DNA of 64,000 nucleotides. Source: Asterias rubens (taxonomy: Eukaryota). The notes beneath the pieces are model-generated. The model was not told the origin of the DNA. It did no database searches and saw only the letters and a list, made by a program, of their open reading frames with translations. Position numbers and translations under genes: made by a program. This document shows, one piece after another, positions 19,855 through 43,474 of the stretch (within the stretch, counting starts at the first letter, position 1; the number at the start of each line of letters is the position of its first letter). Location of the stretch: positions 9,176,001 to 9,240,000 of the forward strand of contig NC_047082.1 in NCBI RefSeq assembly GCF_902459465.1. The letters are read 5' to 3'.

Positions 19855-20130
19855 TTAAAGGCCAGGGACACTATTGGTAATTACTCAAAATAATTATTAG
19901 CATAAAACTTTACTTGGTGACGAGTAATGGGGAGAGGTTGATAGTATAAAACATACGGCTCTCTCTGAAGTGCATAGTTTTCGAGAAAGAAGTACTTTTC
20001 CACGAATTTGATTTTGAGACCTCAGATTTAGAGTTTGGAGGTCTCGAAATCAATCTAAAAGCACACAACGTCGTGTGACAATGTTTTTTTCTTCTTTCAT
20101 TATTATCTCGCAATTTTGACGACCAATTAT
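19855..20130. mobile_element. MITE family A, partial
   Basis: Left TIR after TTAA and part of the body. Confidence 0.7.
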
Positions 20131-21640: not shown

Positions 21641-23733
21641 GTCGTCGAGCATCGTCTTTTCTGGTGTAGCCTTTTGTCGAGGCCTTTGCGGACTGCTTCG
21701 CAGAGCATCACTCTCCCAAGCGACTGCACGGAAAGACCACTCGTGCGATTGGCAGCTGGACTCTCGCGGGCGTTGTCTCCAATGCTACGAAGGCCTTGAC
21801 GAAAGACTAGGGTCTGATGTGCGGGTCCGGATGGCGGACGTGACGATCGAAGCGTGACGGACATGGACTGCGTGAAACTTGTACTCATCAGTTTGCGCAT
21901 GCGATTTACAATAAATGATGGTGTAGTGTACGTGTCTAGAGAAGGGGGGGGGGGGGGGGGGGGCACTGCCGTTACCCACACAATTAAGGTCAATGTTATT
22001 GCACGAATTGTTTTGAACACTCAATCAAAATCGAGTCGAGAGTTACAAGTTTAGCTCCAAGCTGCCTTGTGTCGAGTAAAATAACGAGTTTTAAAACAGA
22101 TTTAGAACATGGGCAACGCAACGAGCGACGCAAAAGGCAAGGCAAGACGCGACGGCCGGACGGACGACGGCACGATGTGACCGCGGGCCCCCAGAGACGA
22201 CGGCGGGTATTATTAGCATGGATGTAGAACGACGCGACGCCGTATAGGGGCGCGGGGCAATATAACGACGCGCGCCGGACGACGGCAAGACGGGCAAAGC
22301 CAAAACCACTATGAAAATAACTTTGAAACCAGGCGAAGGCACAGGCGACGCGACGCACTTCTTGTCTTATCTCGTATTGTAGACCTACATTATAGTAATA
22401 AAACACTTTATGAAATGAAATTAATGCCGCTAGGTCCCCAACCGTACGTTTTGTGTTTTGCGGCGTCAAACCAAACGGCATAGTCGCAATCTGACACACT
22501 TTTTGTCGGTCGGTCATTTGCCTCATAAAGTAGTTCTATGTGCAAAATATCAAATGATTCTCGTGTTATACCAGACTAAATTCCTTCCAGCCTCGGTTTC
22601 ACCACATTAGTTCAGGAATACAAGATGGCTCCACGAGGCCGACAGAGGGGCATCATTGTCCATAGTCCCCCGTGTACAATATCAATAATAAACTGAGTAA
22701 TTGTACTAGATTGTCCTTCGGTTTCATCACATAAATTCAAATGGAAAAATACGAGATGGCTGCCATATGATGAAGGTTTGGTGACTGGGAGGCTGGCGAA
22801 ACAACGGCTTCGGCTTGGGGATCCGTTCTTTCGTCTGAAATCCTTCGTGCGCAAAACACGAGCAATAATTATTGTCATCGACACAATGCGGGGCCAAGCT
22901 AACCTGAGCCAAATCCAAAGACATCCAGTCGTTTCTGGGCTGAATGAGGTGTATTCAAAAGAGGGTGCCATCAGAAGAAGTTTAGTACACAGCTATCCAT
23001 GCTGCCAAATGGGGGACAGAATCTCCAGCACCACCCAATAATATTATTATTATTACAAATGATGACATGGTGAGTCATGGGAATTCCCCATCAAGAGAAA
23101 TGCAATATCATGCCGCGCTGTGCATCACAGCTTCACTTTTATCTTTACGGTGATCATATCAGTAAACAGACCCTGGAGGCGCTTCAGAAAATCTCATTAA
23201 TCTGGAGAAAAATTTGCAAAAGGTACGTATCAAACATTTCTTTTGTATACGCCGCCTCAACTGTTGTTGTTTTGCTGCAAATCGGATTTGTGAAAACTGT
23301 GTAAAAAAAATCTTGTTCACGCGTTTCTCAAAAGTATCATTACAATTTTGGTATTTCATACAATTGAATTGAAGTAACATCACTGTTGTTTTGCTAACAA
23401 AACGGTTGCTGGCATTGTAAGCACTTTACTCCACACATAAACTGACACCTGGTAGAAGTTTTAGATCGATCGGCCTCTCTGGGTCACGAGAGAATAATTA
23501 TTGAGAAAAAAAAAAAACGAATGTTATGGGAAAAAAAGGGAAAAGAAGACAAACGCTCACTGAGCGCAACTCCAAACGGGAAATTTGTTTTATTTGTTCC
23601 CCATCAAATTACACGACATTTCAGAAATAAAAATTTCAATAATGGATGTTATCTACTATCATCATCATTAGACCGTGTAAGCTTATGTGAATCTGTGAAC
23701 ACAGAAGAGTCTTACCAGTTTTGTAATGTTCCT

Positions 23734-24110
23734 TCAAGGGCAGTGGACACTTGGTATTCATTTACTCAATATTATTATTAGCATACAACTTTACTTGGTA
23801 ACGAGTTATGGGGAGAGGTTGATGGTATAAAACGTTGTGAGAAACGGCTCCCTCTGAAGTGACGTAGTTTTCGAGAAATAAGTAATTTTCCACGAATTTG
23901 CTTTCGAGACCTCATATATTATTTATAATTATTTTGAGGTCTCGAAATCAAGCATCTGAAAGGTGTTTTTTTCTTTCATTATTATCTCGCAACTTCGATG
24001 ACCGATTGAGCTAAAATGTTCACAGGTTTGTTATTTTATGCATTATGTTGAGATACACAAAGTGAGAAGACTGGTTTTTGACAGTTACCAATAGTGTCCA
24101 CTGTCTTTAA
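23734..24110. mobile_element. MITE family A
   Basis: TIRs and body match family A. Confidence 0.8.
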
Positions 24111-24585: not shown

Positions 24586-25102
24586 TTAAAGGCACTGGAC
24601 ACTATTGGTTATTCTCAACATAACGTTGTAGCATGAACAACTTACTTGGTAACGTGCAACGGAGAGCTGTTGATATACTTATATAAAGTATGTTTGTGAT
24701 ATGAGAAACGGCTCCCTCTTACTAAATTGTCCAGATCATGTACAATACCCGATAAACACACTGGACACTGTTGGTAATAATTGTCAAAGACCAGTCTTCT
24801 CAGTTGGTGTATCTCAACATAATATCACAAACCTGTGAAAATTTGAGCTCAAATTGGACGTCAATGAAAGAAAATATTGTGTGCTTTCAGATGCTTGATT
24901 TCGAGACCTCAAAATCTAATTATGAGGTATCTAAATCAAATTAATGGAAAATCCCCCCTTTGTTACTCGAAAAATACGTCACTTCAGAGGGAGCCATTTC
25001 TCACAATGTTTTATAATATCAACCTCTTTACTCGTTACCAAGTAAGGTTTTATGCTAATAATTATTTTGAGTAATATTACCATTAGTGTCCACTGCCTTT
25101 AA
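24586..25102. mobile_element. MITE family A: a partial copy followed by a full copy
   Basis: TIR at 24586, second copy at about 24758-25102. Confidence 0.75.
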
Positions 25103-25377
25103 AAGAAGCCAGAGAAATCACTTCCTTTTGCAATGTGCAACTTACATTTAACATTGGTTTTGATTTTGATAATATTTATACAATGATGTGTAGGGACATG
25201 TTGTACAAACATGTACTTTCCTTTGTGGGTTTACACAATCGATGAGGACAATAATTTAACGATGTTTGGAGTTGTATTTTATTTATCTACAGTCTGGATA
25301 CGGGATACTGACTGGAGTGCAAAAACAGAACTAGCATCTTGTCGGTTGGTATCGGGCCTACTTCTCTCGCGCTGACT

Positions 25378-26921
25378 ATGGCGGCTTACGGCGCAACTTT
25401 CAATTTGGTGTAAGTTTTGTTCACTCGACTGAAATAGTGTGTCGAGTTAGATATTACTTGGACAAACATGATGTTAAACGGCAGAACTACTGTTAGGCAT
25501 ATCGTACATGCATCCATATCCCTCACTGTCTTGAGTTGATTTACTCAGTTTGTTTTTGTGAGTTGCCTTTCTTCTTTGCGTCCTATAATGCGAAACTGTT
25601 TTTCTGAGTAGCATGAAACGACTGAAATTAAACTATACAAAAATCTACTTTTGCTGTGCACGTTTTGAGTCAGGGATTACATGGAAATACTTAAAAGCAA
25701 ACCTGTCCGGAGTTAAAAACATTCATTAACATTTTTATCAAAGTTCAAATTTGTAATTTGCATGTTTTTATCGGCACTTTAAAAACAATATTAATATGTA
25801 ATTTTTGATTTGGGAGTTGGAAGAATGAAAGTTCAGACCATAAATGTTTTGTTTGATTGTACTTTCAGTTACGAGGTGGTGGAGGAAGAGGGGCAAATAG
25901 AGCCAGCCCTAAAGAAACTCCGTGAGCCGGGTGAAGGGCTCCCTCTCTTGGCCGTCGACTTAGAGGGGGAAAAACTCAGCCGGGCAGGGGAGCTCGTTAT
26001 CCTGTCTGCTGCAACAGAGAAGCACACTTTCTTGTTTAACATCAAGAAGTTGGGATCCGGGGTGTTCGACAAAGGCCTTAGGGATCTTCTTCAGGATCCA
26101 GATCGTCAGAAGTTGATGTTTGACTGCCGCCAGGACTCAGACTGTCTCTGGCATCAGTACAGCGTCAAACTGACCAACGTACTGGACTTGCAATTGATGG
26201 AGGTAAATGTTTGTGCTTATAAGGATAATGCATGCTGACACTTGTGAAAGGGTTTGAATGGTTTTCACTTTTCTTTCTACCACCAGGCATGTTTGGTGTC
26301 TTGAAGTCTGGAATTACTTCACGTGGTTTTTTATTTGTAGAGTTTATTTCTTGACCAGAATAAACTATCTATTGACAGGTCGTTCATCGGGGTGATCACA
26401 TGAAACAGAACGCCGTTGTAGCATCGCTGGCTTACTCGTCATCCGGGTACCTCCCAAGGGTCAACGGCTTCAAGAAATGTCTCCAGAAGTACAACGTCAA
26501 AGACCATGGCATCCTTCAAGCCAAGGAGCGTGGTAGCCAGGTGATGAAACGTGAAGGGGTCTGGCTTGAGCAACCTCTGCAGAAGGCTCTTCTAGAATAC
26601 TCTGCAGCCGACGTCATGGGGTTTTACAAACTGTACGAGAAGCTGAAAAGCGTCGTGCGTCTGAACAACCACGCTTTAGTAGAGGCATCGAAGAACTACC
26701 TTGAGTTCTTCCGCTCTCGTGCTGTCCGCACCAACGATACGTTCGAGAGGAACGGGTTCGTACCTTGGCGTATTTTTCCAACCACACCGGGCACCGGGCC
26801 GATCACCACGTGCCAGAAATGCAGACAGGGTTTCCCGCGTTCTGATTTCAGGCAGAGAGGACAACAAATTTGTCCTGTCTGCGTCAAAGTCACGACGGAA
26901 GTCAACAAGGGGTGGTATTAA
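25378..26921 (+). CDS. EXD1/Egalitarian-like DEDDy 3'-5' exonuclease with C-terminal C4 zinc finger, paralog 1 (302 aa)
   Basis: join 25378-25409, 25869-26202, 26379-26921 (phases 2, 0; 909 nt). ExoI AVDLEG, ExoII MFDCRQDSDCL, ExoIII LLEYSAADV, C-terminal CQKC-x16-CPVC. Confidence 0.85.
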
Positions 26922-28624
26922 AAAAGAGCTGCGATCAACGGAAAAGTCTCAACAACGACAGGGAAAAATATAAACAGTTTTTCAAAACAAAGGTACCGTT
27001 GTTCAACCTATACATAAGCAAATTTTAGTTTGCTTGTTCAAACTGGGCAACTAGCTTTATATTATTATTAAGTATAACATAGGAAGTGTTATATTTTGTC
27101 ATGTCATAAATTGAAACCAAGGCCCAATTTCACAGAGCTGCTTAAGCACAATAAAGACGATATTAAGCGCAACAAAATAACTGCTTACCACTACTAGAAT
27201 ATGGTTACCATGTCACATGTACAACCTGTGGCTTGTATCCTGCTCATAATATCTGCTAATCAGAAATTTGTTAAGAAATGTTTTGTGCTTAAGCAGCTCT
27301 ATCAAATTGGACCCAGGGTTGGTTCAAATCTAAATTTCGACGAAACAAGCTTTTCGTGCTTTGTTTGCATGGGTGCGTTACGGACCAGGGTCAAGTCACA
27401 CAAGTAATCTTGAGAAAAAAACAAGATCAAAACGCGACTATGAGCATTTTTTTTGTGTGTTAAACAGCATAAAGATCAAAGGTTTTATGATGCTCAGACG
27501 TTAATTAATTTCAACACATTGACGAACAAATTTACAATCATGTATACAATTTTATTCCTCACTATTTGTTTAAATTAATACGTTAGTTTTGTGAAACTGA
27601 AAGTAGGATACGGAATTTATTTGGAGATGTTTACACTTTCAAGAATTAAATACCCATGCGGGTAATAAGTACTCAAATAATGACCCTTAAACGAACACGT
27701 TGCCTTGGATCGGTCGAGTTGGTCTTTGAAAAGCGTTTGTAACCGTTTGTTATAAATTGCATATGATTAGAAAGAGGTTTTAAAAGTAGAATACAATGAT
27801 CCACACAAATTTGCCTCGAAATTGCAATTTTATATAGTGGTTTAGCAGGGTTTCTAGATCTGGTCAGTCATTAATTTACACTTATTTGGGTTTCAAGACA
27901 TACAGTTTAGAATACACCAAGTGTTTATGTGCTGCAGGTCATCCTGGAGTGCCACTTCATCATCTTGATTTTTAATGACTCTATACAAGACAGTGTCATC
28001 TGCATACTGACGGAGATTAGATTGAATGCAAAATGGTAAATCAAAAGCAAAGATATTGAAAAGAATAGGTGCTAGAACAGCACCCTGTGGCACGCCAGAA
28101 TGAACTGCAGCCCAGTCAGATGATAAACCCATAAACTGAACCCGCTGTAATCTGTTTGAAAGATAAGACTTAAACCAGTGCAACATTGAGCCACAAGTAC
28201 CATCTTTATGTAATTTGTTCAAAAGAACTGTGTGACTCACGCGATCAAAAGCTTTTGACCAATCAAGAAATATAGCATCAATGCGGGGCGGTTTTGAAAC
28301 ATCAAGAGCAGTGGCCCAGCTATGATAAAGAGTTGTCAATTGAGTAACGCAAGATCTTTTAGGCAAGAAAGCTTCAAAATACTTGATTTAAAGATAATAA
28401 TAAATGTTCCATGATAATGTTGTATGTATTGGGTGAATATAGAAGGACAATAATAAAGAAGTAATTACCTGAAATGTAGAGGAATAAAACGAGACATGTT
28501 TACTGGTTGAGTCCTCTGTATCGAACGCGTCGGTGAGGGCGTATCGACTTGGTTGGCAAATTAGCATAGCAAGTGGATAAGTTACAATTGCGGTCAGTGA
28601 ATGGATGTCAGGAATGGAACTATT
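25843..28624 (+). repeat. Segmental duplication unit A (paralog-1 exons 2-3, downstream flank, MITE half, LINE part)
   Basis: Direct repeat of 31731-36160, which carries about 1.64 kb more (33713-35356). Confidence 0.9.
27826..28372 (-). mobile_element. Duplicate, further deleted copy of the same LINE RT fragment
   Basis: ORF 27893-28366 has the same RT motifs and is near-identical to 35357-35908. It has the same stop/frameshift after ...LNCMS. Confidence 0.9.
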
Positions 28625-31600
28625 CAGAGTAATTGAGTTACTTCCTTTTAGTTTTGATGTGGGTTTTTGTTTTTAATCAAGGGTTTTTGTTTTGAGAATA
28701 CGGGAATTGAAAGAACATTAAAATATGAAAATAATTTTGAGTGCAAATCAATACAGCGACGAAGACCAGATGTTCCGCCGATGACAGATTATTATCACAT
28801 CGTGTTTCATCACAGGATGGTGCTGTTGGAGCCTGGATGTGTCCAAGTTCGTGTTTAACCAAGCATTATGTAAATTATCAATAATAATTGACTAACAGAT
28901 TTAGAAAAAGTCCTTTAAACGGACAATTATTAATGAATTGGCGCCATTTTGTTCCATTTGAAGGAATAACTTTATGGTTTCTGAACTTACATGTAGGTAA
29001 TGAGCGTAGTTAGTGTTCGTCTGTTAGGCTACAGGGACCAGACTAAAAAATGTCGGCCTCTATTTTTTGTATTAATTGGTTTGCCGGTGGTTGTATAGTT
29101 TACTTTGCAATTTTTTTTTTTTTTTTTTCTACATTCATATCTTATTGACGGGACAGCTTATTCACTCTTATATTTCATATTAAATAATTTTAGGGATGAT
29201 TTTCCAAAAAATACCCATAGACCCTCCCAACAAACAAACAAAGTATATTATGTGTTTTTTTATACTCTTTAAAACATGATATGAATTAGTTTACGTCTAA
29301 AGAAAATATGGTAATAGTGTATAGCACCTTTAAAATGTTACGTGCTCAATAAAGATTCTGGAAATCCCTGAAAACTATGTTGCGCATCACTGCCTGAGAA
29401 CAGTTGATGTTGAACTTCGCACGCTTTGTTCACATAGTCGGTTTTCCCCGACATGTCGCGACGTACGCAACGCCCGTAGGACTTTCCGATAATGTGCCAG
29501 CAGGAATTAAAGTATAAAATACCATTCACGAATTTGGTCGAGCAATTTCTTCCGAGGACAGGAAAGCAAAGGTAGGTACTGAGTTACTTTACTTACTAAC
29601 TTATTATGTTAAAGTCTTTCCACCTTGCAAACCTTTCAAGTCTTCTTAATGTTTGTTAAAGATGACTGAAAAGTCTCCGGCCTAAACTGGTATCGGTATC
29701 GTGACTTTAAGAACTCGATGATTAGGTGATTTGGGTATAATAATGGGTGTACACTTCTGCGCAATGTACACTCACTCCAGTTAGTGCACATCAACCCACT
29801 AGTCGGTTTATGTCATTCATACGAACGACTCTAATGTTGGACAGAACAAAACAAAAGGTTTGAGAATAAATCAACAAATTCTTTGTAATCTGAAGAAAAG
29901 AAAATGATGTCAGTAAGCCATTAATTTTGAAGACTTTTGCTCAGTTGTGTTTGATCTTTTGTGTTTGAGACTTTGGAAATAGCTAGAACTGCCTTGCAGA
30001 GCTGTGTCGAAATGTGATTGGTGAGAAAATGTTTAATAATAGTTTATTAGTGCAACTGTTGCATATTATACGAACATCCGAAGATAAATCGATAATCTAC
30101 CAATTTGTTGTATTCCAATAAGCTGAATAAATATCGGATTAATCGATAGCTTGTATTTTTTAATAAGTAAAATACATGAGATTTATCAAAAATCTATCAG
30201 ATTTGATTTCCAAAAAAGTTGAAAAATTCAGATAAATCGATAATCTATCAAAAATTGGTTTTCTAATAAGTTAATCAATAAAATTAATCGACAATCTATA
30301 TAATAACTGGTGGTTGATTCCGTAGTTTATATCTATGGATCTCACTGCGTTGAATAGAGTGAGAGACGAGATCGTGGAGATCGATGGAGAACACACAGAG
30401 AAAGAGTCTGATTTGTCAGAGGGAAAATTGCCCGAAGGTATCGCGGAGGCAGATAGGGGTGAGAAGAGAAAATGTGGAGGTGCAGAGGCTGGACTAAGTG
30501 GTGAGTTTTTTTTTTTTTTTCTTTTAGTAAAGCAAGATGGCCGCGCTCCATCGCAAACAAATTACAAACATTTTGTTAATTGGTGTTTGCAGCTTTGCAT
30601 GGTGTAGAGAATAAGAGTAACTATAAATATAAATATGATTACACGTAGTAAACTTGCGGGCACAACCATGTGTAAAATCTCTTTTGAGGGAGTGTTGGCT
30701 CTGAAAGAACATTTTGGTATTGATATGACGAGTGGAATTTTGCGGCTGTGATCTGCAATAAGTTATTATAATGGTCGGGCTTATCTTGAAGGTCATCGAT
30801 TGCAGTTTAAAATCTATTAAGCGCTTCAAATCATAATTTTCCAGGTGAAGAGTTGGACGGCAAAAAAGACGAAAGTTCCGCTACGAAGAAACTCAAAATT
30901 GCCTCAATATCAGAAGGATTAAGGTAGGGGCCGGAATTATTTGAAGATTAAACCGTTGAGAAGCGACGAATAAATTATTTATAAAAATAATATGAAAATA
31001 CAGTTATGACAATATTTCGCATAAAGAATACATGCATACTGGCAGCCAATTCCATGAAGTTTCGCAACCATTTCGTCAGCCCATCACTAACTGTACAACA
31101 TTTTAATGATTGCGTAAGTTGTGCGCTAATTACACAACAAACTTTGCGCAAGTGGAATTATACGAAGAAGGTAACGTTTCATAAAAAAAATGGCTCCCGG
31201 CCTCTTATTTCCAGTTAAAAAAAATTGTTTCCCCTTATCATTGAGCATCTTTTAGTTCCATCGTTTGTTCAGTTGTTGAACTGAATAGCCAGTGCCGGGT
31301 GAGAGAGAGAGTCATTTGAGGCAAACTCTACATGATGGGCTGAGCATTCTCTCCAAATGTAAATGTAATGAGTGAAAAACACCCCTCTTTCCATTTCGAG
31401 TTGTCCCTCATCATATGGCTCTTTGAAAAGAGTGGGGGTTATTTCACTCTTTTAGAGGGGTTTCACTCCGGGACAGAGTGAAAAATCACTCAAAAAGATG
31501 CAAACTTCAATCTAAAATAGTGGAAGACCACTCGAAAAAGAGTTGTCCCTCATATGGCTCTTCAAAGAGTGCCTTTTCACTCTTTTGCATTTCGAGAGTT

Positions 31601-31731
31601 CATTTGTCCATCACGTTAAAGAACAAAATGATAATGTTTGAATTTGGAACTGGACAGATGGAGTTTCAGTTCTCAGTGTTTTGTTTGATTGTACTTTTAG
31701 CTACGAAGTCGTGGATTAAGAAGAGCAAATA
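28620..31731 (+). repeat. Segmental duplication unit B' (inverted copy of 38196-41205)
   Basis: Reverse complement of the paralog-3 upstream region, exons 1-3 and start of the first catalytic exon. Small indels separate the two copies. Confidence 0.9.
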
Positions 31732-32814
31732 ATGTTTTGTTTGATTGTACTTTCAGTTACGAGGTGGTGGAGGAAGAGGGGCAAATAGAGCCAGCCCTAA
31801 AGAAACTCCGTGAGCCGGGTGAAGGGCTCCCTCTCTTTGCCGTCGACTTAGAGGGGGAAAAACTCAGCCGGGCAGGGGAGCTCGTTATCCTGTCTGCTGC
31901 AACAGAGAAGCACACTTTCTTGTTCAACATCAAGAAGTTGGGACCCGGGGTGTTCGACAAAGGCCTTAGGGATCTTCTTCAGGATCCAGACCGTCAGAAG
32001 TTGATGTTTGACTGCCGCCAGGACTCAGACTGTCTCTGGCATCAGTACAGCGTCAAACTGACCAACGTACTGGACTTGCAAGTGATGGAGGTAAATGTTT
32101 ATCCTTTATAAAGGAGAATGCATGCTGACACTGGTGAAAGGTTTTGAACGGTTTTCACTTTTCTTTCTACCACCAGGGCATGTTTGGTGTCTTGAAGTCT
32201 GGAATTACTTCACGTAGTTTTTTATTTGTAGAGTTTATTTCTTGACCAGAATTAACTATATCTATTGACAGGTCGTTCATCGGGGTGATCACATGAAACA
32301 GAACGCCGTTGTAGCAATGCTGGCTTACTCGTCATCCGGGTACCTCCCAAGGGTCAACGGCTTCAAGAAATGTCTCCAGAAGTACAACGTCCAAGACCAA
32401 GGCATCCTTCAAGCCAAGGAGCGTGGTAGCCAGGTGATGAAACGTGAAGGGGTCTGGCTTGAGCAACCTCTGCAGAAGGCTCTTCTAGAATACTCTGCAG
32501 CCGACGTCATGGGGTTTTACAAACTGTACGAGAAGCTGAAAAGCGCCGTGCGTCTGAACAACCACGCCGTAGTAGAGGCATCGAAGAACTACCTCGAGTT
32601 CTTCCGCTCTCGTGCTGTCCGCACCAACGATACGTTCGAGAGGAACGGGTTCGTACCTTGGCGTATTTTTCCAACCACACCGGGCACCGGGCCGATCACC
32701 ACGTGCCAGAAATGCAGACAGGGTTTCCCGAGTTCTGATTTCAATCAGAGAGGACAACACATTTGTCCTGTCTGCGTCAAAGTCACGAAGGAAGTCAACA
32801 AGGGGTGGTATTAA
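30335..32814 (+). CDS. Chimeric EXD1-like exonuclease, paralog 2 (373 aa if spliced to the distal acceptor at 31757)
   Basis: join 30335-30500, 30845-30923 (copies of paralog-3 N-terminal exons), 31757-32090, 32272-32814 (copies of paralog-1 exons 2-3). Phases 1, 2, 0 are compatible and the ORF is open. A competing proximal acceptor at 31700 leads to TAA after 5 codons. Confidence 0.65.
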
Positions 32815-33573
32815 AAAAGAGCTGCGATCAACGGAAAAGTCTCAACAACGACAAGGAAAAATATAAACAGTTTTTCAAAACAAAGGTACCGTTGTTCAAC
32901 CTATACATAAGCAAATTTTAGTTTGCTTGTTCAAACTGGTCAACTAGCTTTATATTATTATAAAGTATAACACAGGAAGTGTTATATTTTGTCATGTCAT
33001 AAATTGAAACCAAGGCCCAATTTCACAGAGCTGCTTAAGCACATTAAAGACGATATTAAGCGCAACAAAATAACTGCTTACCACTACTAGAATATGGTTA
33101 CCATGTCACATGTACAACCTGTGGCGTGTATCCTGCTCATAATATCTGCTAATCAGAAATTTGTTAAGAAATATTTTGTGCTTAAGCAGCTCTATCAAAT
33201 TGGACCCAGGGTTGGTTCAAATCTAAATTTCGACCGAAACAAGCTGTTCGTGCTTTGTATGGGTGCATTACGGACCAGTGTCAAGTCACACAAGTAATCT
33301 TGAGAAAAAAAAAATCAAAACGCGACTGTGAGCATTATTTTTTGTGTTAAACAGCATAAAGATCAAAGGTTTAATGATGCTCAGACGTTAATTAATTTCA
33401 ACACATTGACGAACAAATTTACAATCATGTATACAATTTTATTCCTCACTATTTGTTTAAATTAATACGTTAGTTTTGTGAAACTGAAAGTAGGATACGG
33501 AAATTATTTGGAGATGTTTACACTTTCAAGAATTAAATACCCATGCGGGTAATAAGTACTCAAATAATGACCC

Positions 33574-33941
33574 TTAAACGAACACGTTGCCTTGAATCGG
33601 TCGAGTTGGTCTTTGAAAAGCGTTTGTAACCGTTTGTTATAAAATGCATATGATTAGAAAGAGGTTTTAAAAGTAGAATACAATGATCCACACAAATTTG
33701 CCTCGAAATTGCGTGGTTTTCCTTTTACTTTGCGAACTAACACGGTCGGCCATTTATGGGAGTCAAAAATTTGACTCCCATAAATGGCCGACCGTGTTAG
33801 TCGACGAGATAAAAGGAATCGTGTGGATCATTATATTCTACTTTTAAATTATCTATCAAACCATAATGCATTTTATAATAAACGGTTACACACGCTTTTC
33901 AAAGACCAACTCGACCGATCCAAGGCAACGTGTTCCTTTAA
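33574..33941. mobile_element. MITE family D
   Basis: Long palindromic TIRs and TTAA TSD. Only its left half survives in the duplicate at 27687-27825. Confidence 0.85.
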
Positions 33942-34289
33942 AACTTACTTGGTAAGAGCTGTTGATAATGTATATCATTTTCAGAAACGATTGATTTCCA
34001 AGAAACGTGGTTTTAGAGGGATTCTAAAAGATAATGATAAAATCTGAAACCCATTTCTGCATGAAACGTTTCTCAGATTGTGTAGTCCATTATGGGTGAT
34101 TCTTCCAGCGTGGACATACCGCTCTTCTAGAGTATCAGCGACATCTAACAAAATCCTTTTCAAATGTAGTTTAATTTATATAATTAACAATGTTTAAACA
34201 GTTCGGCGTCTCCCGCTATTTTTAGTATCCGATCGGCCAACATTTTTGGGCCGCACCTTAATTCAAGATGAATCTAGATTTCATGTTTT

Positions 34290-35908
34290 ATTATTTCATT
34301 TCATTTTCATTTCATTTCATTTATTAATTTCACAGGCACAAATTCAAGCACAGACAATAAGACAGAAGAAAACAAAAACATGAACATACAATACAATAAC
34401 AAAAAAAGCAGCACCCCTGAAGGATTTAAAAAAAGTAAACTAAATTACTATCGAGTTAATCTCCTGATGCCACAATTTACGAAGAGATAAAAAGGGACAT
34501 TACAGATGGACATTATTAAAACATGGCATACAGTATAAAAATATAGAACTATACAAGCAGTTAAAACTATAAAAGCCCTAATGGGCATTAATAATACAAA
34601 ATCGTTAAAAGAGAGATTCTAGTTAATTATGCAAAAGGCACTATAAATTTGAGAAATAAAAAACAGCAGCAAGGTATTTGAATGGGCAAGGCAACTAGAA
34701 AGTTACACTGTTTTGGTCAAGGGGACCTCCTCGCCAGGGACTAATAAATGATTCCTGAGGGAATTTGTGAAGGAGGATAAGCTATGGATAATTGTATCTT
34801 TAATGCAGGCCGGTAGTTCGTCCCATAATCTAGGGAATCTGTGAAAAAGAGAATGATGGGCAGCATTGGAACGAGCCCGATGATGGACAAATTTAACAGA
34901 TTCGATATGTCTACAGTTAATGGGAATTAGAGTGTCCGTGTCAATGTCAAATTTGTTATATAAACATTTAATAACAAACGTAATTGAAAGGAAATGAACC
35001 CTGTTGATTAACCTGTCAGAATATTCAATTTCATTTACAGAATCAATTAAAACCCTTCTCGGCAGACCCAAACAAAAACGGGTGAATCGCCTCTGTACCT
35101 TCTCCAGCGTTTTTTGCCGAGTCGAAAGAGCAGGGCACCAGACTGGAGCTGCGTATTCAAGTATGGGTCTGCTAATTGAGCGATAAAGTAAAGTCAGAAT
35201 GTAAGGGTTTCTAGTTTTAACTACTCTACCAATAAATCCGTTGAGTCTAGTGGCTTTGGAACTGACTTTATTAACATGTGTTTTCCAGCTTAAGTCCCTG
35301 GAGATAATAACACCCAAGTATTTGTAACTATCCACATTTTCCAAAGTGTTTTCAGCAATTTTATACAGTGGTTTAGCAGTGTTTCTAGACCTGGTCACAG
35401 TCATTAATTTACACTTATTTGGGTTTCAAGACATACAGTTTAGAATACACCAAGTGTTTATGTGCTGCAGGTCATCCTGGAGTGCCACTTCATCATCTTG
35501 ATTTTTAATGACTCTGTACAAGACAGTGTCATCTGCATACTGACGGAGATTAGATTGAATGCAAAATGGTAAATCAAAAGCAAAGATATTGAAAAGAATA
35601 GGTGCTAGAACAGCACCCTGTGGCACGCCAGAATGAACTGCAGCCCACAGTCAGATGATAAACCCATAAACTGAACCCGCTGTAATCTGTTTGAAAGATA
35701 AGACTTAAACCAGTGCAACATTGAGCCACAAGTACCATATTTATGTAATTTGTTCAAAAGAACTGTGTGACTCACGCGATCAAAAGCTTTTGACCAATCA
35801 AGAAATATAGCATCAATGCGGGGCGGTTTTGAAACATCAAGAGCAGTGGCCCAGCTATGATAAAGAGTTGTCAATTGAGGAACGCAAGATCTTTTTAGGC
35901 AAGAAAGC
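34290..35908 (-). mobile_element. 5'-truncated, frameshifted non-LTR retrotransposon (L2/CR1-group LINE) RT fragment
   Basis: RT motifs FLDWSKAFDRVSH, GVPQG, YADD, YKYLGV, RPILEYAAPVW, LEKVQRRFTR. Frameshifts near 35426 and 35640. 3' tail of (ATGAA)n type at about 34290-34325. Confidence 0.9.
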
Positions 35909-36934
35909 TTCAAAATACTTGATTTAAAGATAATAATAAATGTTCTATGATAATGTTGTATGCACTGGGTGAATATAGAAGGACAATAATAAAGAAGTAA
36001 TTACCTGAAATGTAGAGGAATAAAACGAGACATGTTTACTGGTTGAGTCCTCTGTATCGAACGCGTCGGTGAGGGCGTATCGACTTGGTTGGCAAATTAG
36101 CATAGCAAGTGGATAAGTTACAATTGCGGTCAGTGAACGGGTGCAAAGAATGGAACTATTAAGGAACACAAAAAGGGGTGCTCTGATCTATCACGTGTAT
36201 ATTATTTTAGGACTAAAACAAACCCTTTTCCAGGTGTTTGTCAGAGAATTTGTTTAGGAGTAGGTTTTTGTATTCTTTATAGACAAAGGTCTTAACACCA
36301 GAATTTGTGCCAGGAACTGTGTTTCATAACTTTTTTTTTTCTGTACGGCTATTTTTTGAACGCTCTTTCGCACTTTGCGTCTCCACTATTTTCACCATTT
36401 TGGTGGCCTTAAAAACCAACCAAGCAAAGTGTAAATTATTAATAAGAATCAAATAATATTGGTATAAAAAAGTCCTCCCAAGCAACAGTTAAGAAACGAA
36501 TGAATAACAGCCATTTATTTGACTTTAAAGGATTCTAATCGAGTCAAGAAACAAATTACCCGAATACCGATCAAACATGTACCCTATTTCCGCAAAACAC
36601 GCTTCCGTTCACGGACGAAGGCAATACATTTACGTTCGATTCTTCATCGATTATTTACAACTTTTATCGATAACTTGAATGTATTGTCTTTATGTCAAAA
36701 AAACTCGAGAATAATTGGAACCGATTTGTTTTTATGTGTTCGATAATGTTGTCTTGTATACGGGTGGAAGTATAAAAAGAATCCCAATAATTTGTATTAT
36801 TATTCACCAACCGTTTTTTTCTCGGATAATTCACGGCACCTTCGTTTTTTTTAAATTCAATCTGATGATTTTTTTTTTAGGAACTGTTCTTCTTCATTCC
36901 TCTGAGACCTTTGGAGTAATTTTTAGTTTGTTTT

Positions 36935-39604
36935 CTAAAACAAAGGGTCTTCATAATATTCGTCACATTCGAATTCACGATTCCAGTTATACTCTCTACT
37001 TTTCTGTACATCTTTCACATTTTTAACCTTCCTGCAGACTGGGCATTTCTGTACCCCTTCCCGCTTTTGGGTGGTTGTGAAGTCCGCACTGGGAAATAGG
37101 CGCTTGCAACCCACGCACTTGACTTCTGTGCTATAATAGCTCTGGAAAATACGCCAGGGCAGGAATGGGTTCCCTTCGTAATTATCGTAGGAACGGTCTT
37201 CTTTCAATCGGTAGAAATCGACATATCTATTCGAAACATCCCGCAGTAAATTCAGAACGTTCCCTGTTTCGCTCAGTACTTTGAACAACCGCAGCATGCC
37301 GATTACATCGGCTGCAGCATACCGTAGAAATGACTTGCGAAGAGGTCGGGTCAACCACACACCATCTGAGTGACTTTCCAATCCTTTCTTTGCCTTGATG
37401 AGATCTTCATCTTTGACGTAGTCTTCGAGACATTTCTGAAAGCCGAGAACTCTTGGAACATCTAGAACTCGTTTGTTTGTACGAAGGTTCAACTGTTGAT
37501 GGGTTGATGCATCACCTCGGTGGATGACCTGCAGTGATTTGTGTTGAATATAAAAACACGGTTGACACAATTATTATGAAAAACCTTCAGTGAAACACCT
37601 TTCATGGCAGTATGGAAGGGGCACACTGTCTTCTTGGGCACATTGGGTTGAAACAAAATTGCTTGTTATAAAATGAATACGGTTGGAAAGAAGTTTTAAA
37701 AAGTAGAACATAATGATAAAGTCCCCCGAAATAGTGGTTTTCCTTTTCTTACTTCGTGAACAGTCGCGGTCCGCCGCGGCCGTTTTGTTGAACCAATGTT
37801 CGGCGTTTATAATCAAAAGAACACACAAGGGTCCCGTTTCATTTACATGAGTGTTACTAACTGTATTGTAAGTTCTTTAAGAAACAATTTGTTTTTGTTA
37901 CCTCCATCAATTGCAAGTCCAGCACATTGGTCAGTTTGACGTTGTATTTATGCCAGAGACAGTCCGAGTCCTGACGGCAGTCAAACATCAACTTCTGACG
38001 GTCCGGATCCTGAAGAAGGTCCATCAGGCCTTTGTCGAACACCTTGGATCCCAACGTCTTGATGTCGAACAAGAACGTGTCATTCTCCGTTGCAACGGAC
38101 ACGATGGCGAGCTCACCCTTCCGGTTGAGTTTCTCCCCCTCTAAGTCGACGGCCAAGAGAGGGAGTCCTTTACGGAGTTTCTCAAGGGCTGGCTCTATTT
38201 GCTCTTCTTCATCCACGACTTCGTAGCTAAAAGTACAATCAAACAAAACACTGAGAACTGAAACTCCATCTGTCCAGTTCCAAATTCAAACATTATCATT
38301 ATGTTCTTTAACGTGATGGACAAATGAACTCTCGAAATGCAAAAGAGTGAAAAGGCACTCTTTGAAGAGCCATATGAGGGACAACTCTTTTTCGAGTGAT
38401 CTTCCACTATTTTAGATTGAAGTTTGCATCTTTTTGAGTGATTTTTCACTCTGTCCCGGAGTGAAACCCCTCTAAAAGAGTGAAATAACCACCACTCTTT
38501 TCAAAGAGCCATATGATGAGTGACAACTCGAAATGGAAAGAGTGGTTGTTTTTCACTCATTACAATATTTACATTTAGAGAGAATGCTCAGCCCATCATG
38601 TGGAGTTTGCCTCAAATGACTCTCTATTCAGTTCAACAACTGAACAAACGATGGAACTAAAAGATGCCCAATGATAAGGGGAAACAATTTTTTTAAACTG
38701 GAAATAAGAGGCCGGGAGCCATTTTTTTTATGAAACGTTACCTTCTTCGTATAATTCCACTTGCGCAAAGTTTGTTGTGTAATTAGCGCACAACTTACGC
38801 AATCATTAAAATGTTGTACAGTTAGTGATGGGCTGACGAAATGGTTGCGAAACTTCATGGAATTGGCTGCCAGTATGCATGTATTCTTTAGGCGAAATAT
38901 TGTCATAACTGTATTTTCATATTATTATCATAAATAATTTATTCGTCGCTTCTCAACGGTTTAATCTTCAAATAATTCCGGCCCCTACCTTAATCCTTCT
39001 GATGTTGAGGCAATTTTGAGTTTCTTCGTAGCGGAACTTTCGTCTTTTTTGCCGCCCAACTCTTCACCTGGAAAATTATGATTTGAAGCGCTTACATGTT
39101 AAACTGCAATCATGACCTTCAAGATAAGCCCGACCATTATAATAACTTTTTGCAGATCACAGCCGCAAAATTCCACTCGTCATATCAATAATAAAATGTT
39201 CTTTCAGAGCCAACACTCCCTCAAAAGAGATTTTACACATGGCTGTGCCCGCAAGTTTACTACGTGTAATCATATTTATATTTTATAGTCTCTTATTCTC
39301 TACACCTTGTTAAGCTGCAAACACCATTTAACAAAATGTTTGTAATTTGATTGCGATGGAGCGCGGCCATCTTGCTTTAGTCAAAAAAAAAAAAAAAAAA
39401 AAACTCACCACTTGGTCCAGCCTCCGCACCTCCACATTTTCTCTTTTCACCCCTCTCTGCCTCTGCGACACCTTCGGGCAATTTTCCCTCTGACAAATCA
39501 GACTCTTTCTCTGTGTGTTCTCCATCGATCACGATCTCCACGGAGCTGTTGATCTCGCCATACACCTTCTCGTCTCTCACTCTATTCAACGCAGTGAGAT
39601 CCAT
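36935..39604 (-). CDS. EXD1/Egalitarian-like DEDDy 3'-5' exonuclease with acidic/basic N-terminal extension and C4 zinc finger, paralog 3 (397 aa)
   Basis: join(complement) 39409-39604, 38989-39067, 37902-38226, 36935-37528 (1194 nt; phases 1, 2, 0). Motifs AVDLEG, MFDCRQDSDCL, FLRYAAADV, CVGC-x20-CPVC. A non-coding upstream exon has its donor at 40289. Confidence 0.85.
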
Positions 39605-41205
39605 AGATATAAACTACGGAATCAACCACCAGTTATTATATAGATTGTCGATTAATTTTATTGATCAACTTATTAGAAAACCAATTTTTGATAGATTATC
39701 AATTTATCTGAATTTTTCAACTTTTTTGGAAATCAAATCTGATAGATTTTTGATAAATCTCATGTATTTTACTTATTGAAAAATACAAACTATCGATTAA
39801 TCCGATATTTATTCAGCTTATTGGAATACAACACATTGGTAGATTATCGATTTATCTTCGGATGTTCGTATAATATGCAACAGTTGCACTAATAAACTAT
39901 TATTAAACATTTTCTCACCAATCACATTTCCACACAGTTCTGTAAGGCAGTTCTAGCTATTTCCAAAGTCTCAAACACAAAAGATCAAACACAACTGAGC
40001 AAAAGTCTTGAAAATTACTGGCTTACTGACATCATTTTCTTTTCTTCAGATTACAAAGAATTTGTTGATTTATTCTCAAACCTTTCGTTTTGTTCTGTCC
40101 AACATTAGAGTCGTTCGTATGAATGGCATAAACCGACTAGTGGGTTGATGTGCACTAACTGGAGTGAGTGTACATTGCGCAGAAGTGTACACCCATTATT
40201 GTACCCAAATCACCTAACCATCGAGTTCTTAAAATCACGATACCGATACCAGTTTAGGCCGGAGACTTCCCAGTCATCTCAGTACCTACCTTTGCTTTCC
40301 TGTCCTCGGAAGAAATTGCTCGACCAAATTCGTGAATGGTATTTTATACTTTTATTTCCTGCTGGCACATTATCGGAAAGTTCTACAGGCGTTGCGTACG
40401 TCGCTACGTGTCGGGGAAAACCGACTATGTGAACAAAGCGTGCGAAGTTCAACATCAACTGTTCTCAGCCAGTGCTGCGCAACATAGTTTTCAGGGATTT
40501 CCAGAATCTATATTGAGCACGTAACATTTTAAAGGTGCTATACACTATTGCCATATTTTCTTTAGACGTAAACTAATTCATATCATGTTTTAAAGAGTAT
40601 AAAAAACACATAATATACTTTGTTTGTTTGTTGAGGAGGGTCTATGGGTATTTGTTGGAAAATCATCCCTATATTTATTTGATATGAAATATAGAGGGAA
40701 TAAGCTGTACCGTCATATGAATGTAGAAAACAATAAAAAAGAAATTGCAAAGTAAACTATACAACCACTGGCAAACCAATTAATACCAAAGATAGAGGCC
40801 GACATGTTTTAGTCTGGTCCCTGTAGCTTAACAGACGAACACTAACTACGCTCATTACCTACATGTATGTTCAGAAACCATAAAATCATTCCTTCAAATG
40901 GAACAAAATGGCGCCAATTCATTAATAATTGTCGGTTTAACGGACTTTTTCTAAATCTGTTATTCAATTATTATTGATAATTTAAACACGAATTTGGACA
41001 CATCCAGGCTCCAACAGCACAATCCTGTGATGAAACACGGTGTGATATTAATATGTCATCGGCGGAACATCTGGTCTTCGTCGCTGTATTGATTTGCACT
41101 CAAAATATTATTTTCATATTTTATTGTTCTTTCAATTCCCGTATTCTCAAAAAAACAAAACCCCACATCAAAACTAAAAGGAAGTAACACAATTACTCTG
41201 AATAG
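38196..41205 (-). repeat. Segmental duplication unit B (template of B')
   Basis: Reverse complement matches 28620-31731. Confidence 0.9.
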
Positions 41206-41539: not shown

Positions 41540-43474
41540 ATGGATACCAACTCGACCTCAATGACAACTGTACCATCCAGTGAGCAACTCAGTAGAGACG
41601 GTAGTGTTTGTGAGTATACGAATCTCAATGATGCTTTAAATTGCAATTACAATACAACCACGTATATAGTGATATATGATGGCAACAACGGGAGGCTGGT
41701 AGTGCAGGAATCGGTTTGAGATGTTGGATGAATAATAGATCGGGGGAAACCACCGTTATTATTATATAGACATAATATACAGCGACGTAAAAACCAATCC
41801 ATCATTAGCTCATCAAAACCGTTTGAGACTCAATCCAGAGTTACTAAAAAAAACAAAAACAAAAAAACCAAAAAACTAATCAAAACCAATCAACAAAATG
41901 AATAATATTAAACAAACATTGAGCAACTGAATTTTGTACCAGGGATTGCTTTGTAACTGAACAACCCAACAATTATTTATAGAATATTAATTTTGTCTTT
42001 TACCCAAACACCGATGTGTGTTAGCACTGTATACTCAGTACTTTTCCGAGTGCTGTGAACAAATATCACAGGCTATCAACCGGGTGGGATTCGAACCCAC
42101 GACTCTTGCAATTCTAGAGCAGTGTCTTACCAACTAGACTACCGAGATTGCCCGGTAGCTAGAGGCAGTTCGAATCCTATTTTTAACATCTATTATATAA
42201 TTTAACATCTATTATGTAAATTATTGATAGGGTTAGTAGTTTGCACGTCAGCATGTACGGATTTCGCCAATCAAGTGTGTTCCTTTTTTAAACTCGACTA
42301 CTGGTGCATTTTTTTTTTCTCGTTCTGATTTATCCTCGCATTCAAATAAATTCGTTTGATTGTAACTACTGTTGTTATTTTCTTATACAGTTGTGGTTGC
42401 ATTTATTTCACTGTGTGTTGGACTCATCAACTCTCTGGTCATTGTCCTCACGATCATGTGGTTATACAGACATTATAAAGTAAGGTAAGATGTTAATATT
42501 CTACATGGATCGACCATCTAGAACAGCCTCAACATCTGACTTCGTACTTCGTCTGTCTTGAGCCTCAGTTCCCGTCCATGGTTTTAACTATGTTCTAACC
42601 AAATTCAATATTTTTTTGCAAACGTAAAATACCTCCTTGGTTGATCCACAAATGGGAGACTTTGAGGTGCTAGGTGGCAACAGACTTACCTGGTACATTT
42701 CCATTGTTTATGTAGTTCTGAGCGTGCGCACATTATCGAGAACAATTGATTTTACCTGGTAGGTCTGCTGCCACCAAGCGTCCTGAAAGTCTCCCATTCA
42801 ACGTTTCGTTTGAACAGTTGTGTGACACTGTTAAAATCTGTGGCCATCTGTTTTCGTTTTGCATTTGTTTGGCTTCCCATCTTTTTTATGAAGTACAACT
42901 ATTTTTCGAGTGGTCTTCCACTCTTTTAGATTGAAGTTTGCATCTTTTGAGTGAAACTGTCCTGGAGTGAAACCCCTTTAAAAGGGTGAAATAACCACCA
43001 GTCTTTTTGAAGAGCCATATGAGGGACAGCTCGAAATGTAAAGAGTGGTGTTTTTCACTCTTTTACATTTAGAGGATAGTTTTCCAACCGCGGTTGGCAA
43101 AAACTCGGGCTAAAGACATTGCATGGTCCAACGAGTGGGGTTATAATCTAGTAAGATAATTGTCCCAATTTTAATCAATTATTTACTGCAGAAGCGAAAA
43201 CGACCAATCAAGAAAGATCAAGACAGGCAAACCAAGCAAAGTCCTCTCCATTGATTACAAGATGACGTCCCTGGATATGATGACTGCTGATGAATACTGC
43301 CCTCAACGGTACACTTCATCCACGAATGAACGCATGGCCAGCACCGGGCAACAAGTGGGGCACACGGACCGACAAGTTGAAATGGATAATGGTGCCTTTA
43401 CGGTGGATCCGGAAAGCGTGCAGTTTGAACCACCGGATCACGTCAATATGCACCCATCGAGGGGGACGTTATAG
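41540..43474 (+). CDS. Small orphan single-pass (type III-like) membrane protein, about 148 aa
   Basis: join 41540-41609, 42391-42484, 43192-43474. Donors GTGAGT and GTAAGA, acceptors TTATACAG and TTACTGCAG, phases 1 and 2 compatible. TM segment FVVAFISLCVGLINSLVIVLTIMWLY is followed by RHYKVR. Confidence 0.6.
42000..42180 (-). mobile_element. tRNA-derived SINE
   Basis: Reverse complement contains TAGTCTAGTTGG and GGTTCGAATCCC; homologous to 8970-9165. Confidence 0.75.
42651..42798. mobile_element. Hairpin MITE (GGAGACTTT ends); second copy at 53403-53547
   Basis: About 45-bp inverted arms; two dispersed copies. Confidence 0.75.

What the first reader, a model, noticed from the sequence alone, without database searches (positions are those of the whole stretch)
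25378..39604. Cluster of three catalytically intact EXD1-like exonucleases with a C-terminal zinc finger and no Lsm/LOTUS domain
Seen: all three copies keep every DEDDy catalytic position (VDLE, RQD, YxxxD) and end in a CxxC..CxxC finger, with only short or acidic N-termini. Known: canonical EXD1 (piRNA pathway) carries an N-terminal Lsm-like domain that binds TDRD12 and is described as RNA-binding rather than as an active nuclease; Egalitarian carries a LOTUS domain. Inference: this is a distinct, locally expanding and probably active nuclease-plus-zinc-finger subfamily, a candidate small-RNA trimming or antiviral/anti-transposon effector system.
Basis: partly seen in the sequence, partly recalled or inferred. 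Interest (0 to 1): 0.75.

Follow-up and report, generated by a model that had tools for sequence, protein, structure and literature searches.

The report
Starfish exonuclease-plus-zinc-finger gene cluster
Three neighbouring starfish genes encode a probably active RNA-trimming enzyme fused to a small zinc finger; they belong to an old, widespread and unstudied family that looks like a catalytically intact cousin of the piRNA factor EXD1.

Summary
The window is Asterias rubens. It carries three spliced paralogues with a PF01612 3'-5' exonuclease domain, every DEDDy residue, and a C-terminal CxxC..CxxC finger. Copy 3 equals RefSeq XP_033645072.1, named "piRNA biogenesis protein EXD1-like". RNA contigs confirm two of its introns. 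Its first ~80 residues are predicted disordered, so no Lsm exon was missed.

The architecture differs from canonical EXD1, and the cluster is expanding locally. Copy 2 is a recent chimera: copy 3's 5' region, inverted, joined to copy 1's body. The three copies form an Asterias-specific clade.

The family is not local, though. It occurs in starfish, corals, anemones, a brachiopod, a nemertean, bivalves, fungi and Euglena, with the DEDDy and Cys columns almost invariant. The best solved match is Trypanosoma RNase D (TbRND), an active exoribonuclease with a C-terminal zinc-finger domain, followed by Egalitarian and EXD1.

The most likely function is an active 3'-5' exoribonuclease whose finger helps hold substrate. 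This is inferred, not shown. A small-RNA or antiviral role is untested. I found no paper on the family. The scan noted the same family elsewhere in this genome (s1-180053).

The parts
25378..25409 (+). Copy 1, putative first coding exon (MAAYGATFNL, phase 2, donor GT|GTAAGT)
   Evidence: The reading phase fits exon 2. It is not confirmed by reads or by any annotated model. An in-frame ATG at about 25826 is an alternative start.
25869..26202 (+). Copy 1 exon 2: ExoI (VDLEG, 25954-25968) and ExoII (CRQDSD, 26125-26142)
   Evidence: PF01612 at E 2e-9. Motif positions. The share of 31-letter words held in RNA-type runs is 0.69-0.79, which equals the exon fraction of 0.79.
26379..26921 (+). Copy 1 exon 3: ExoIII (YSAADV, 26598-26615), helical linker, C4 finger (26811-26882), stop codon
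30335..30500 (+). Copy 2 exon 1 (acidic N-terminus; 30-nt in-frame deletion relative to copy 3)
   Evidence: RNA contigs in runs X1 and X6 carry exactly the four copy-2-specific letters listed table 3 for this exon (window positions 39446, 39455, 39464, 39469 on copy 3), as shown by comparing.
30845..30923 (+). Copy 2 exon 1b (79 nt, restores the reading phase)
   Evidence: The copy-2-specific letter (equivalent to 39055 C>T) is seen in RNA contigs of X1 and X6.
31757..32090 (+). Copy 2 exon 2 (ExoI 31842-31856, ExoII 32013-32030). A second, copy-3-derived acceptor lies 56 nt upstream, so that alternative exon 2 would start at 31701, and gives a premature stop if used.
32272..32814 (+). Copy 2 exon 3 (ExoIII 32491-32508, C4 finger 32704-32775, stop codon)
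36935..37528 (-). Copy 3 exon 3 (ExoIII 37321-37304, C4 finger 37117-37034, acidic/aromatic tail, stop codon). The 3' UTR runs beyond 36400.
37902..38226 (-). Copy 3 exon 2 (ExoI 38150-38136, ExoII 37979-37962)
   Evidence: PF01612 at E 4e-12. Spliced contigs join it to exon 3 and to exon 1b.
38989..39067 (-). Copy 3 exon 1b (79 nt; GEELGGKKDESSATKKLKIASTSEGL)
   Evidence: Joint 38226>38989 in RNA contigs. Sequence.
39409..39604 (-). Copy 3 exon 1 (acidic, predicted disordered N-terminus of isoform X1)
   Evidence: RNA contigs cover 39413-39615. Equals the start of XP_033645072.1.
40290..40455 (-). Copy 3 alternative first exon (isoform X2, XP_033645073.1). Its inverted copy at 29407-29573 carries a frameshift.
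   Evidence: tblastn and phase test.
28620..31731 (.). Inverted duplicate of copy 3's 5' region (41205-38196), 92-95% identical. It forms the 5' half of copy 2.
   Evidence: Self-BLAST.
31731..36163 (.). Direct duplicate of copy 1's body and downstream flank. 25843-27825 matches 31731-33712 at 97.2% and 27824-28627 matches 35355-36163 at 97.5%. An extra 1.6 kb of LINE sequence (33713-35354) lies between the two blocks.
   Evidence: Self-BLAST.
27893..28366 (-). LINE reverse-transcriptase fragment downstream of copy 1. Related pieces lie at 34703-35404 and 35605-35913 (-). It is not part of the genes.
   Evidence: PF00078 at E 9e-18. ORF list.

Best explanation
The stretch holds three transcribed paralogues of one gene family in Asterias rubens. 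Each protein has four parts: a short or disordered N-terminus, a DEDDy 3'-5' exonuclease domain of the EXD1/Egalitarian/TbRND clade with every catalytic residue intact, a two-helix linker, and one C-terminal C4 zinc finger.

The family is ancient. It is found in animals, fungi and Euglena. Canonical EXD1 (Lsm domain gained, catalytic residues lost) and Egalitarian look like specialised relatives.

Copies 1 and 3 are old paralogues kept under purifying selection, and their exon 2 was homogenised later. Copy 2 is a recent chimera made by an inverted-plus-direct duplication. It carries copy 3's promoter and 5' exons joined to copy 1's body.

Inferred mechanism: the enzyme is an active, metal-dependent 3'-5' exoribonuclease. 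The linker and zinc finger hold the substrate upstream of the 3' end, as the zinc-finger domain does in Trypanosoma RNase D. Alternatively the finger docks a partner protein. The identity of the genes is shown. The activity, the substrate and the pathway are inferred.
For: Identity and gene structure:
- Gene models and motifs.
- Copy 3 equals XP_033645072.1.
- Spliced RNA contigs confirm two introns of copy 3.
- Copy 1's exact 31-letter words are held at the exon fraction in eight runs.
- Copy-2-specific letters appear in RNA contigs.

Family placement:
- PF01612 matches every family member scanned: the 10 proteins and the 43.
- Single-sequence search of solved structures: Bombyx EXD1 5e-15, TbRND 1.5e-11, Egalitarian 1.4e-10, EXD2 1e-4.
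- Family-profile search of solved structures: TbRND 1.5e-35 (aligned through the finger region), Egalitarian 1e-33, EXD1 2e-27, Rrp6 1e-15.
- Foldseek gives the same order.
- The top five Swiss-Prot models are EXD1, aligned only to residues 1-256.

Conservation:
- In 66 members, ExoI D is 63/66, ExoI E 66/66, ExoII D 66/66, Tyr 62/66, ExoIII D 63/66, and each Cys 65/66.
- The C4 finger is modelled at pLDDT 86-96.
- dN/dS between copies 1 and 3 is 0.19 in exon 2 and 0.23 in exon 3.

Mechanistic analogy: TbRND is an active exoribonuclease whose zinc fingers bind nucleotides R5-R9 of the substrate (PMC7797062).
Against: - No activity data exist for any member.
- Egalitarian also keeps all DEDDy residues, yet mutating them does not affect its known function (bioRxiv 10.1101/2025.08.03.668247). 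Intact motifs therefore do not prove that catalysis matters.
- The finger here is a single C4 module, not TbRND's four CCHC knuckles, so its RNA-binding role is only positional analogy.
- Copies 1 and 2 differ with dN/dS of 0.99 (12 non-synonymous and 4 synonymous codon changes). One of them may be drifting.
- Copy 2 has a competing upstream acceptor that gives a premature stop.
- Copy 1's first exon is unverified.
- No RefSeq protein for copies 1 or 2 turned up in the searches.
Confidence: 0.6

Rival explanations
1. The proteins are RNA-binding adaptors, like EXD1 and Egalitarian. The nuclease fold serves as an RNA-binding surface, and catalysis is absent or irrelevant.
For: The two closest characterised animal relatives work this way. 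EXD1 is inactive and binds ssRNA (PMC4712191). Egalitarian keeps DEDDy, but the residues are dispensable for its known function (10.1101/2025.08.03.668247). Sequence and fold place the family close to both.
Against: All five DEDDy positions are 94-100% conserved across 66 members from fungi to starfish. That is hard to explain without selection on catalysis. EXD1 lost these residues once it became an adaptor. TbRND, the best profile and fold match, is active (PMC7797062).
Confidence: 0.2
2. They are DNA 3'-5' exonucleases acting in repair or replication (like WRN-exo or EXD2) rather than RNA enzymes.
For: The PF01612 fold acts on either nucleic acid. WRN and EXD2 are detectable relatives.
Against: WRN and EXD2 score far lower (profile E about 2e-9) than the RNA-acting relatives TbRND, Egalitarian, EXD1 and Rrp6 (1e-35 to 1e-15).
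Confidence: 0.1
3. They are ordinary EXD1 orthologues whose Lsm exon was missed by the gene model.
For: RefSeq names them 'EXD1-like'. EXD1 proteins are the nearest reviewed structures.
Against: - RNA contigs and two RefSeq isoforms define the 5' exons of copy 3. They encode about 90 acidic residues, of which the first ~80 are predicted disordered (pLDDT about 40), not a beta-barrel.
- 60 of 66 family members have fewer than 70 residues before the DxE motif. In EXD1 proteins the Exo domain starts at residues 69-126.
- The catalytic residues and the C4 finger are unlike EXD1.
Confidence: 0.03
4. The cluster, or at least copy 2, is non-functional duplication debris or a transposon-carried ORF, in a LINE-rich and rearrangement-prone region.
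For: - LINE reverse-transcriptase fragments flank the copies.
- Copy 2 arose by a complex rearrangement.
- dN/dS between copies 1 and 2 is about 1.
- Copy 2 has a cryptic acceptor that leads to a premature stop.
- DEDDy ORFs are known in rotifer retroelements (PMC5408684).
Against: - All three ORFs are intact.
- The genes have canonical introns, and copy 3 has alternative first exons. All three copies have transcript evidence.
- The older paralogues show dN/dS of about 0.2.
- The paralogue lineages pair by species in the tree, as host genes do.
- The reverse-transcriptase pieces lie on the opposite strand, outside the transcripts.
Confidence: 0.07

Closest known systems
Trypanosoma brucei RNase D (TbRND; PDB 7C42-7C4C)
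   Same: It has an intact DEDDy Exo domain, then a linker, then a C-terminal zinc-finger domain. It is the best profile hit (1.5e-35, aligned through the finger region) and the best Foldseek hit (299 columns). A Euglena family member (P0037) carries both the C4 finger and a CCHC knuckle.
   Different: TbRND has four CCHC knuckles rather than one C4 finger. It is mitochondrial and trims the U-tails of guide RNAs, a process that does not exist in animals. Identity is only about 22%.
EXD1 (piRNA biogenesis protein; mouse and human; Bombyx PDB 5FIQ/5FIS)
   Same: It is the closest animal Exo domain by single-sequence search (5e-15). EXD1 proteins are the top five reviewed structural matches at 20-27% identity. 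The match extends through the helical region after ExoIII. RefSeq names the starfish genes 'EXD1-like'.
   Different: EXD1 has an N-terminal Lsm domain that binds TDRD12, has lost its catalytic activity, and was not aligned to the finger region of the starfish model (PMC4712191). The starfish proteins have no Lsm domain, keep all DEDDy residues, and have a C4 finger.
Egalitarian (Drosophila; PDB 9UJU, 9RVY)
   Same: It has an intact DEDDy Exo domain of the same clade (profile E 1e-33; Foldseek).
   Different: Egalitarian is about 1000 aa, with a large N-terminal region, WHD/EHD domains and BicD/Dlc-binding parts. It has no C4 finger. Its catalytic residues are dispensable for mRNA localisation (10.1101/2025.08.03.668247).
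Stc1 domain (PF12898; S. pombe Stc1, PDB 2LUY)
   Same: The C4 finger gives repeated weak matches to positions 49-83 of the 84-position Stc1 profile. A relative with six fingers (P0010) reaches 51 bits.
   Different: The window proteins score 12-15 bits against a cut-off of 24.8. Only 3 of 43 members reach E<=0.01. The finger profile hits Stc1's structure at E 0.36, worse than the SIRT3 zinc ribbon at 1e-4. Only one finger is present, not the tandem pair. This is a resemblance, not membership.

Membership tests
PF01612 DEDDy 3'-5' exonuclease superfamily | Significant match to the domain profile | tested here: met
   Exon 2 pieces alone score E 4e-12 to 3e-9, above the gathering score. The A. 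amurensis orthologue of copy 3 (P0004) scores 2.8e-12 over its full length.
PF01612 DEDDy 3'-5' exonuclease superfamily | ExoI D-x-E, ExoII D, ExoIII Y-x3-D all present | tested here: met
   VDLEG, CRQDSD and Y[S/A]AADV are present in all three copies. These columns are 94-100% conserved in 66 relatives.
Canonical EXD1 | N-terminal Lsm domain (the TDRD12-binding module) | tested here: not met
   Copy 3's 5' exons are fixed by RNA contigs and RefSeq. Residues 1-80 have pLDDT about 40 and no predicted strands. Pfam finds no N-terminal domain in its orthologue P0004. Copy 1 has at most about 40 residues before DxE.
Canonical EXD1 | Catalytically dead DEDD pocket used for RNA binding | tested here: not met
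   All catalytic residues are retained. At the aligned positions Bombyx EXD1 has AVSGDG where the window has AVDLEG, and CRKLSD where the window has CRQDSD.
Canonical EXD1 | Exo domain closer to EXD1 than to other exonuclease families | tested here: inconclusive
   EXD1 is the best hit for a single sequence and among reviewed models. The family profile and Foldseek rank TbRND and Egalitarian equal or better.
Canonical EXD1 | Association with TDRD12 and PIWI | not testable with these tools
   This needs co-immunoprecipitation.
TbRND-type RNase D (Exo + C-terminal zinc-finger domain) | Intact Exo domain followed by a linker and a C-terminal zinc-binding domain | tested here: met
   The profile alignment runs through the finger region. 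Foldseek aligns 299 columns.
TbRND-type RNase D (Exo + C-terminal zinc-finger domain) | Array of CCHC knuckles | tested here: not met
   The three window copies and nearly all relatives have a single CxxC..CxxC finger. CCHC knuckles were seen in the Euglena relative P0037 by Pfam; P0044 shows similar motifs by eye only.
TbRND-type RNase D (Exo + C-terminal zinc-finger domain) | U-preferring 3'-5' exoribonuclease activity | not testable with these tools
   This needs an enzyme assay.
Egalitarian | Large N-terminal region, WHD/EHD domains, BicD- and Dlc-binding parts | tested here: not met
   The proteins are 302-397 aa. Pfam finds only PF01612, with weak Stc1 matches, on the window's exon pieces and on copy 3's orthologue P0004.
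Stc1 domain (PF12898) | Tandem zinc-finger domain matched above the curated cut-off | tested here: not met
   Only the second half of the profile is matched, at 12-15 bits against a cut-off of 24.8. PDB 2LUY scores E 0.36.

The most novel reading that the evidence does not exclude
This family is the ancestral, still catalytic form from which the inactive piRNA adaptor EXD1, and perhaps Egalitarian, descended. In starfish its repeated and ongoing duplication reflects a role as a 3'-end trimming or degrading nuclease in a small-RNA or anti-transposon/antiviral pathway, with the C4 finger docking it to an Argonaute/PIWI complex or to substrate RNA.
Probability: 0.15. Interest if true: 0.75.

Novelty: new variant of a known kind. 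Interest (0 to 1): 0.5.

Why it matters
EXD1 and Egalitarian are textbook cases of nucleases that became RNA-binding adaptors. A widespread sister lineage that keeps every catalytic residue and carries a conserved zinc finger could show what the ancestral enzyme did. It also offers an untested candidate for 3'-end processing of small or other RNAs in cnidarians, lophotrochozoans, echinoderms and fungi.

I found no paper that describes the family, and databases label it only 'EXD1-like'. The label 'piRNA biogenesis protein' on these genes is therefore probably misleading.

The locus also documents how a new gene copy can be assembled from one paralogue's promoter and another's body by an inverted-plus-direct duplication.

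Tried and rejected
- **Stc1 link.** Pfam gave repeated weak matches to the second half of PF12898. Only 3 of 43 members reach E<=0.01. A finger-only profile hits the SIRT3 zinc ribbon (1e-4) better than Stc1's own structure (0.36). I treat the finger as a generic C4 module.
- **Transposon-borne ORF.** DEDDy ORFs occur in rotifer retroelements (PMC5408684). I rejected this for the cluster because of the introns, the alternative first exons, the species-paired paralogue lineages and purifying selection.
- **Related-species loci.** I tried to fetch the loci of P0003 and P0001. No DNA was served.
- **Word-based protein search with exon 3 alone.** It found only three fragments. Full-length relatives came from the exhaustive profile search.
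- **Tree with canonical EXD1, Egalitarian and TbRND.** No such sequences could be obtained, and I did not type them in. Orthology to EXD1 therefore stays open.
- **Separate Lsm-containing EXD1 elsewhere in the genome.** Only this window is readable. A findings search for 'Lsm' returned nothing. [quoted passage not shown]
- **Copy 2 splicing.** Which acceptor copy 2 uses is unknown.
- **Literature.** Searches for 'EXD1-like' and for 'Stc1 domain' plus 'exonuclease' found nothing relevant.
Full report
**What is there**

The window is eukaryotic DNA at about 39% GC. Between 25.3 and 40.5 kb there are three copies of a split gene. ORF listing, sequence reading and spliced translation give these models:

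- Copy 1 (+): exon 2 at 25869-26202 and exon 3 at 26379-26921.
- Copy 2 (+): exons at 30335-30500, 30845-30923, 31757-32090 and 32272-32814, giving 373 aa.
- Copy 3 (-): exons at 39604-39409, 39067-38989, 38226-37902 and 37528-36935, giving 397 aa.

Without it the acidic first exon (phase 1) cannot join exon 2 (phase 2).

Each copy carries VDLEG, CRQDSD and Y[S/A]AADV, plus one CxxC-x16-20-CxxC finger. Pfam PF01612 matches exon 2 at E 4e-12 to 3e-9.

**Organism and annotation**

The copy 3 translation is letter-for-letter XP_033645072.1, [quoted passage not shown]. Isoform X2 uses an alternative first exon at 40455-40290. No RefSeq protein for copies 1 or 2 surfaced in the searches.

**Transcript evidence**

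- Copy 3: contigs from three RNA-type runs join 37528 to 37902 and 38226 to 38989 across GT..AG introns with no mismatches. They cover exon 1, and the 3' UTR runs past 36400.
- Copy 2: the same contigs include a second form. Its differences at 39469, 39464, 39455 and 39446 (and 39055 in exon 1b) are exactly the letters that distinguish copy 2 from copy 3 (table 3). Copy 2's 5' exons are therefore transcribed.
- Copy 1: eight small runs hold 0.75-0.79 of its sampled 31-letter words. The exon-only share is 0.79, and the share expected from copy 2 alone is 0.45. This fits a spliced copy 1 transcript.

Two things remain unverified: copy 1's first exon, and which acceptor copy 2 uses. A copy-3-derived acceptor giving an exon start at 31701 would produce a premature stop.

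**No Lsm domain**

The AF2 model of copy 3 (66-sequence alignment, mean pLDDT 82) has residues 1-80 at pLDDT about 40 with no secondary structure. The Exo domain, two long helices and the finger are all above 90. Pfam finds nothing N-terminal. In 60 of 66 relatives fewer than 70 residues precede the DxE motif. In reviewed EXD1 proteins the Exo domain starts at residues 69-126. Canonical EXD1 is an Lsm domain plus an inactive Exo domain plus a dimerisation hook (PMC4712191).

**History of the cluster**

Self-BLAST gives these blocks:

- 25843-27825 matches 31731-33712 (97.2%, direct).
- 27824-28627 matches 35355-36163 (97.5%, direct).
- 28620-31731 matches 41205-38196 (92-95%, inverted).

Copy 2 is therefore copy 3's 5' region, inverted, joined inside intron 1b/exon 2 to copy 1's body. 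This agrees with the scan's other note on the stretch (s1-150598).

Copies 1 and 2 differ by 12 non-synonymous and 4 synonymous codons (dN = dS = 0.021).

Copies 1 and 3 are old paralogues. In exon 3, dS is saturated at 2.3, dN/dS is 0.23, and amino-acid identity is 41%. In exon 2, dS is only 0.41 and dN/dS is 0.19, and the nucleotide similarity stops at the exon 2 donor. This points to an older exchange of exon 2 between the two lineages.

**The family**

An exhaustive profile search with the exon 3 region found 292 clusters at 50% identity. Many are 300-350 aa and match through to the finger.

Named members come from:

- starfish: Acanthaster, Patiria, and two Asterias species, each with several paralogues
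- corals and anemones
- Lingula (a brachiopod) and Lineus (a nemertean)
- the bivalves Mytilus and Mya
- Basidiomycota and Ascomycota
- Euglena

The protein atlas gives the same picture.

In a tree of 24 members the starfish genes form one clade (97/99). It contains several paralogue lineages shared by Acanthaster and Patiria. The three window copies, an A. amurensis orthologue of copy 3 and an unnamed NCBI sequence (P0173) form a separate clade (100/98).

**Nearest characterised relatives**

- A single sequence finds Bombyx EXD1 first (5e-15), then TbRND and Egalitarian.
- The family profile finds TbRND first (1.5e-35, aligned through the finger region), then Egalitarian (1e-33), EXD1 (2e-27), Rrp6 (1e-15), Mut-7, EXD2 and WRN.
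- Foldseek with a pLDDT-92 model of the Patiria paralogue gives the same order.
- Among reviewed proteins the top five are EXD1, aligned only to residues 1-256 and so not to the finger.

TbRND is an active exoribonuclease whose C-terminal zinc fingers bind the RNA upstream of the 3' end. Its authors called the Exo-plus-finger combination very unusual (PMC7797062).

**The finger**

The finger gives weak matches to the second half of the Stc1 domain. These are not specific. I treat it as a generic C4 module with the conserved pattern C-x-G-C-x-R-x-F-P-x3-F...C-x-V-C.

**Reading**

Identity and evolution are well supported. Function is inferred. The near-invariance of all five DEDDy positions from fungi to starfish and the purifying selection on the old paralogues argue for a working enzyme. 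TbRND offers the best mechanistic model.

Egalitarian is a warning: it has intact motifs that are dispensable for its known role. Any link to piRNAs or to defence is speculative. I found no paper on the family.

Noticed in passing
window 42077-42148 (-), with 41916-42300: A tRNA-like sequence (Rfam tRNA 43 bits; ARAGORN calls it tRNA-Ser AGA, but it is only 72 nt long). It lies in a stretch with enormous depth in RNA contigs (up to 8e5) and many irregular joints. It is probably the head of a tRNA-derived SINE family.
   Followed up: partly
window 38173-38566 (intron 1b of copy 3); copies at 31360-31554 and 42887-43074: A repeat of about 200 bp inside the intron has contig depth of 1e3 to 1e5 in all four runs. 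That is far above the gene's own depth of about 35-100. It is a highly transcribed dispersed element.
   Followed up: no
window 49570-50352 (-) and 51319-52059 (-): Two ORFs, each encoding a C-type lectin domain plus a PAN domain (Pfam E 1e-12 and 6e-13). They lie in a tandem duplication at 90% identity (49555-50446 against 51303-52204). An immune-type gene family sits next to the exonuclease cluster.
   Followed up: partly
window 3291-3675, 5810-6196, 12105-12442, 19855-20128, 23733-24110, 24753-25104, 56832-57229, 58981-59359, 60340-60644: An interspersed repeat of about 390 bp is present in at least ten copies in both orientations at 72-92% identity. One copy lies just upstream of copy 1.
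   Followed up: no
P0004 (XP_071807509.1, A. amurensis isoform X2) against P0200 (isoform X1): The annotated X2 isoform of the copy 3 orthologue lacks 16 residues inside exon 2 that include the ExoI DxE motif. If real, it is a catalytically dead splice form.
   Followed up: no
window 31690-31760: At the copy 2 breakpoint the copy-3-derived sequence (up to ...GAGCAAATA) abuts the copy-1-derived sequence (ATGTTTTG...) with only 1-3 nt of shared letters. The join leaves two acceptor sites 56 nt apart.
   Followed up: partly
window 48108-48235: A run of 128 N (assembly gap or masked).
   Followed up: no
P0010 (701 aa, ENA contig): A relative with one Exo domain followed by six copies of the same C4 finger. 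This shows that the finger is an independent, repeatable module.
   Followed up: partly
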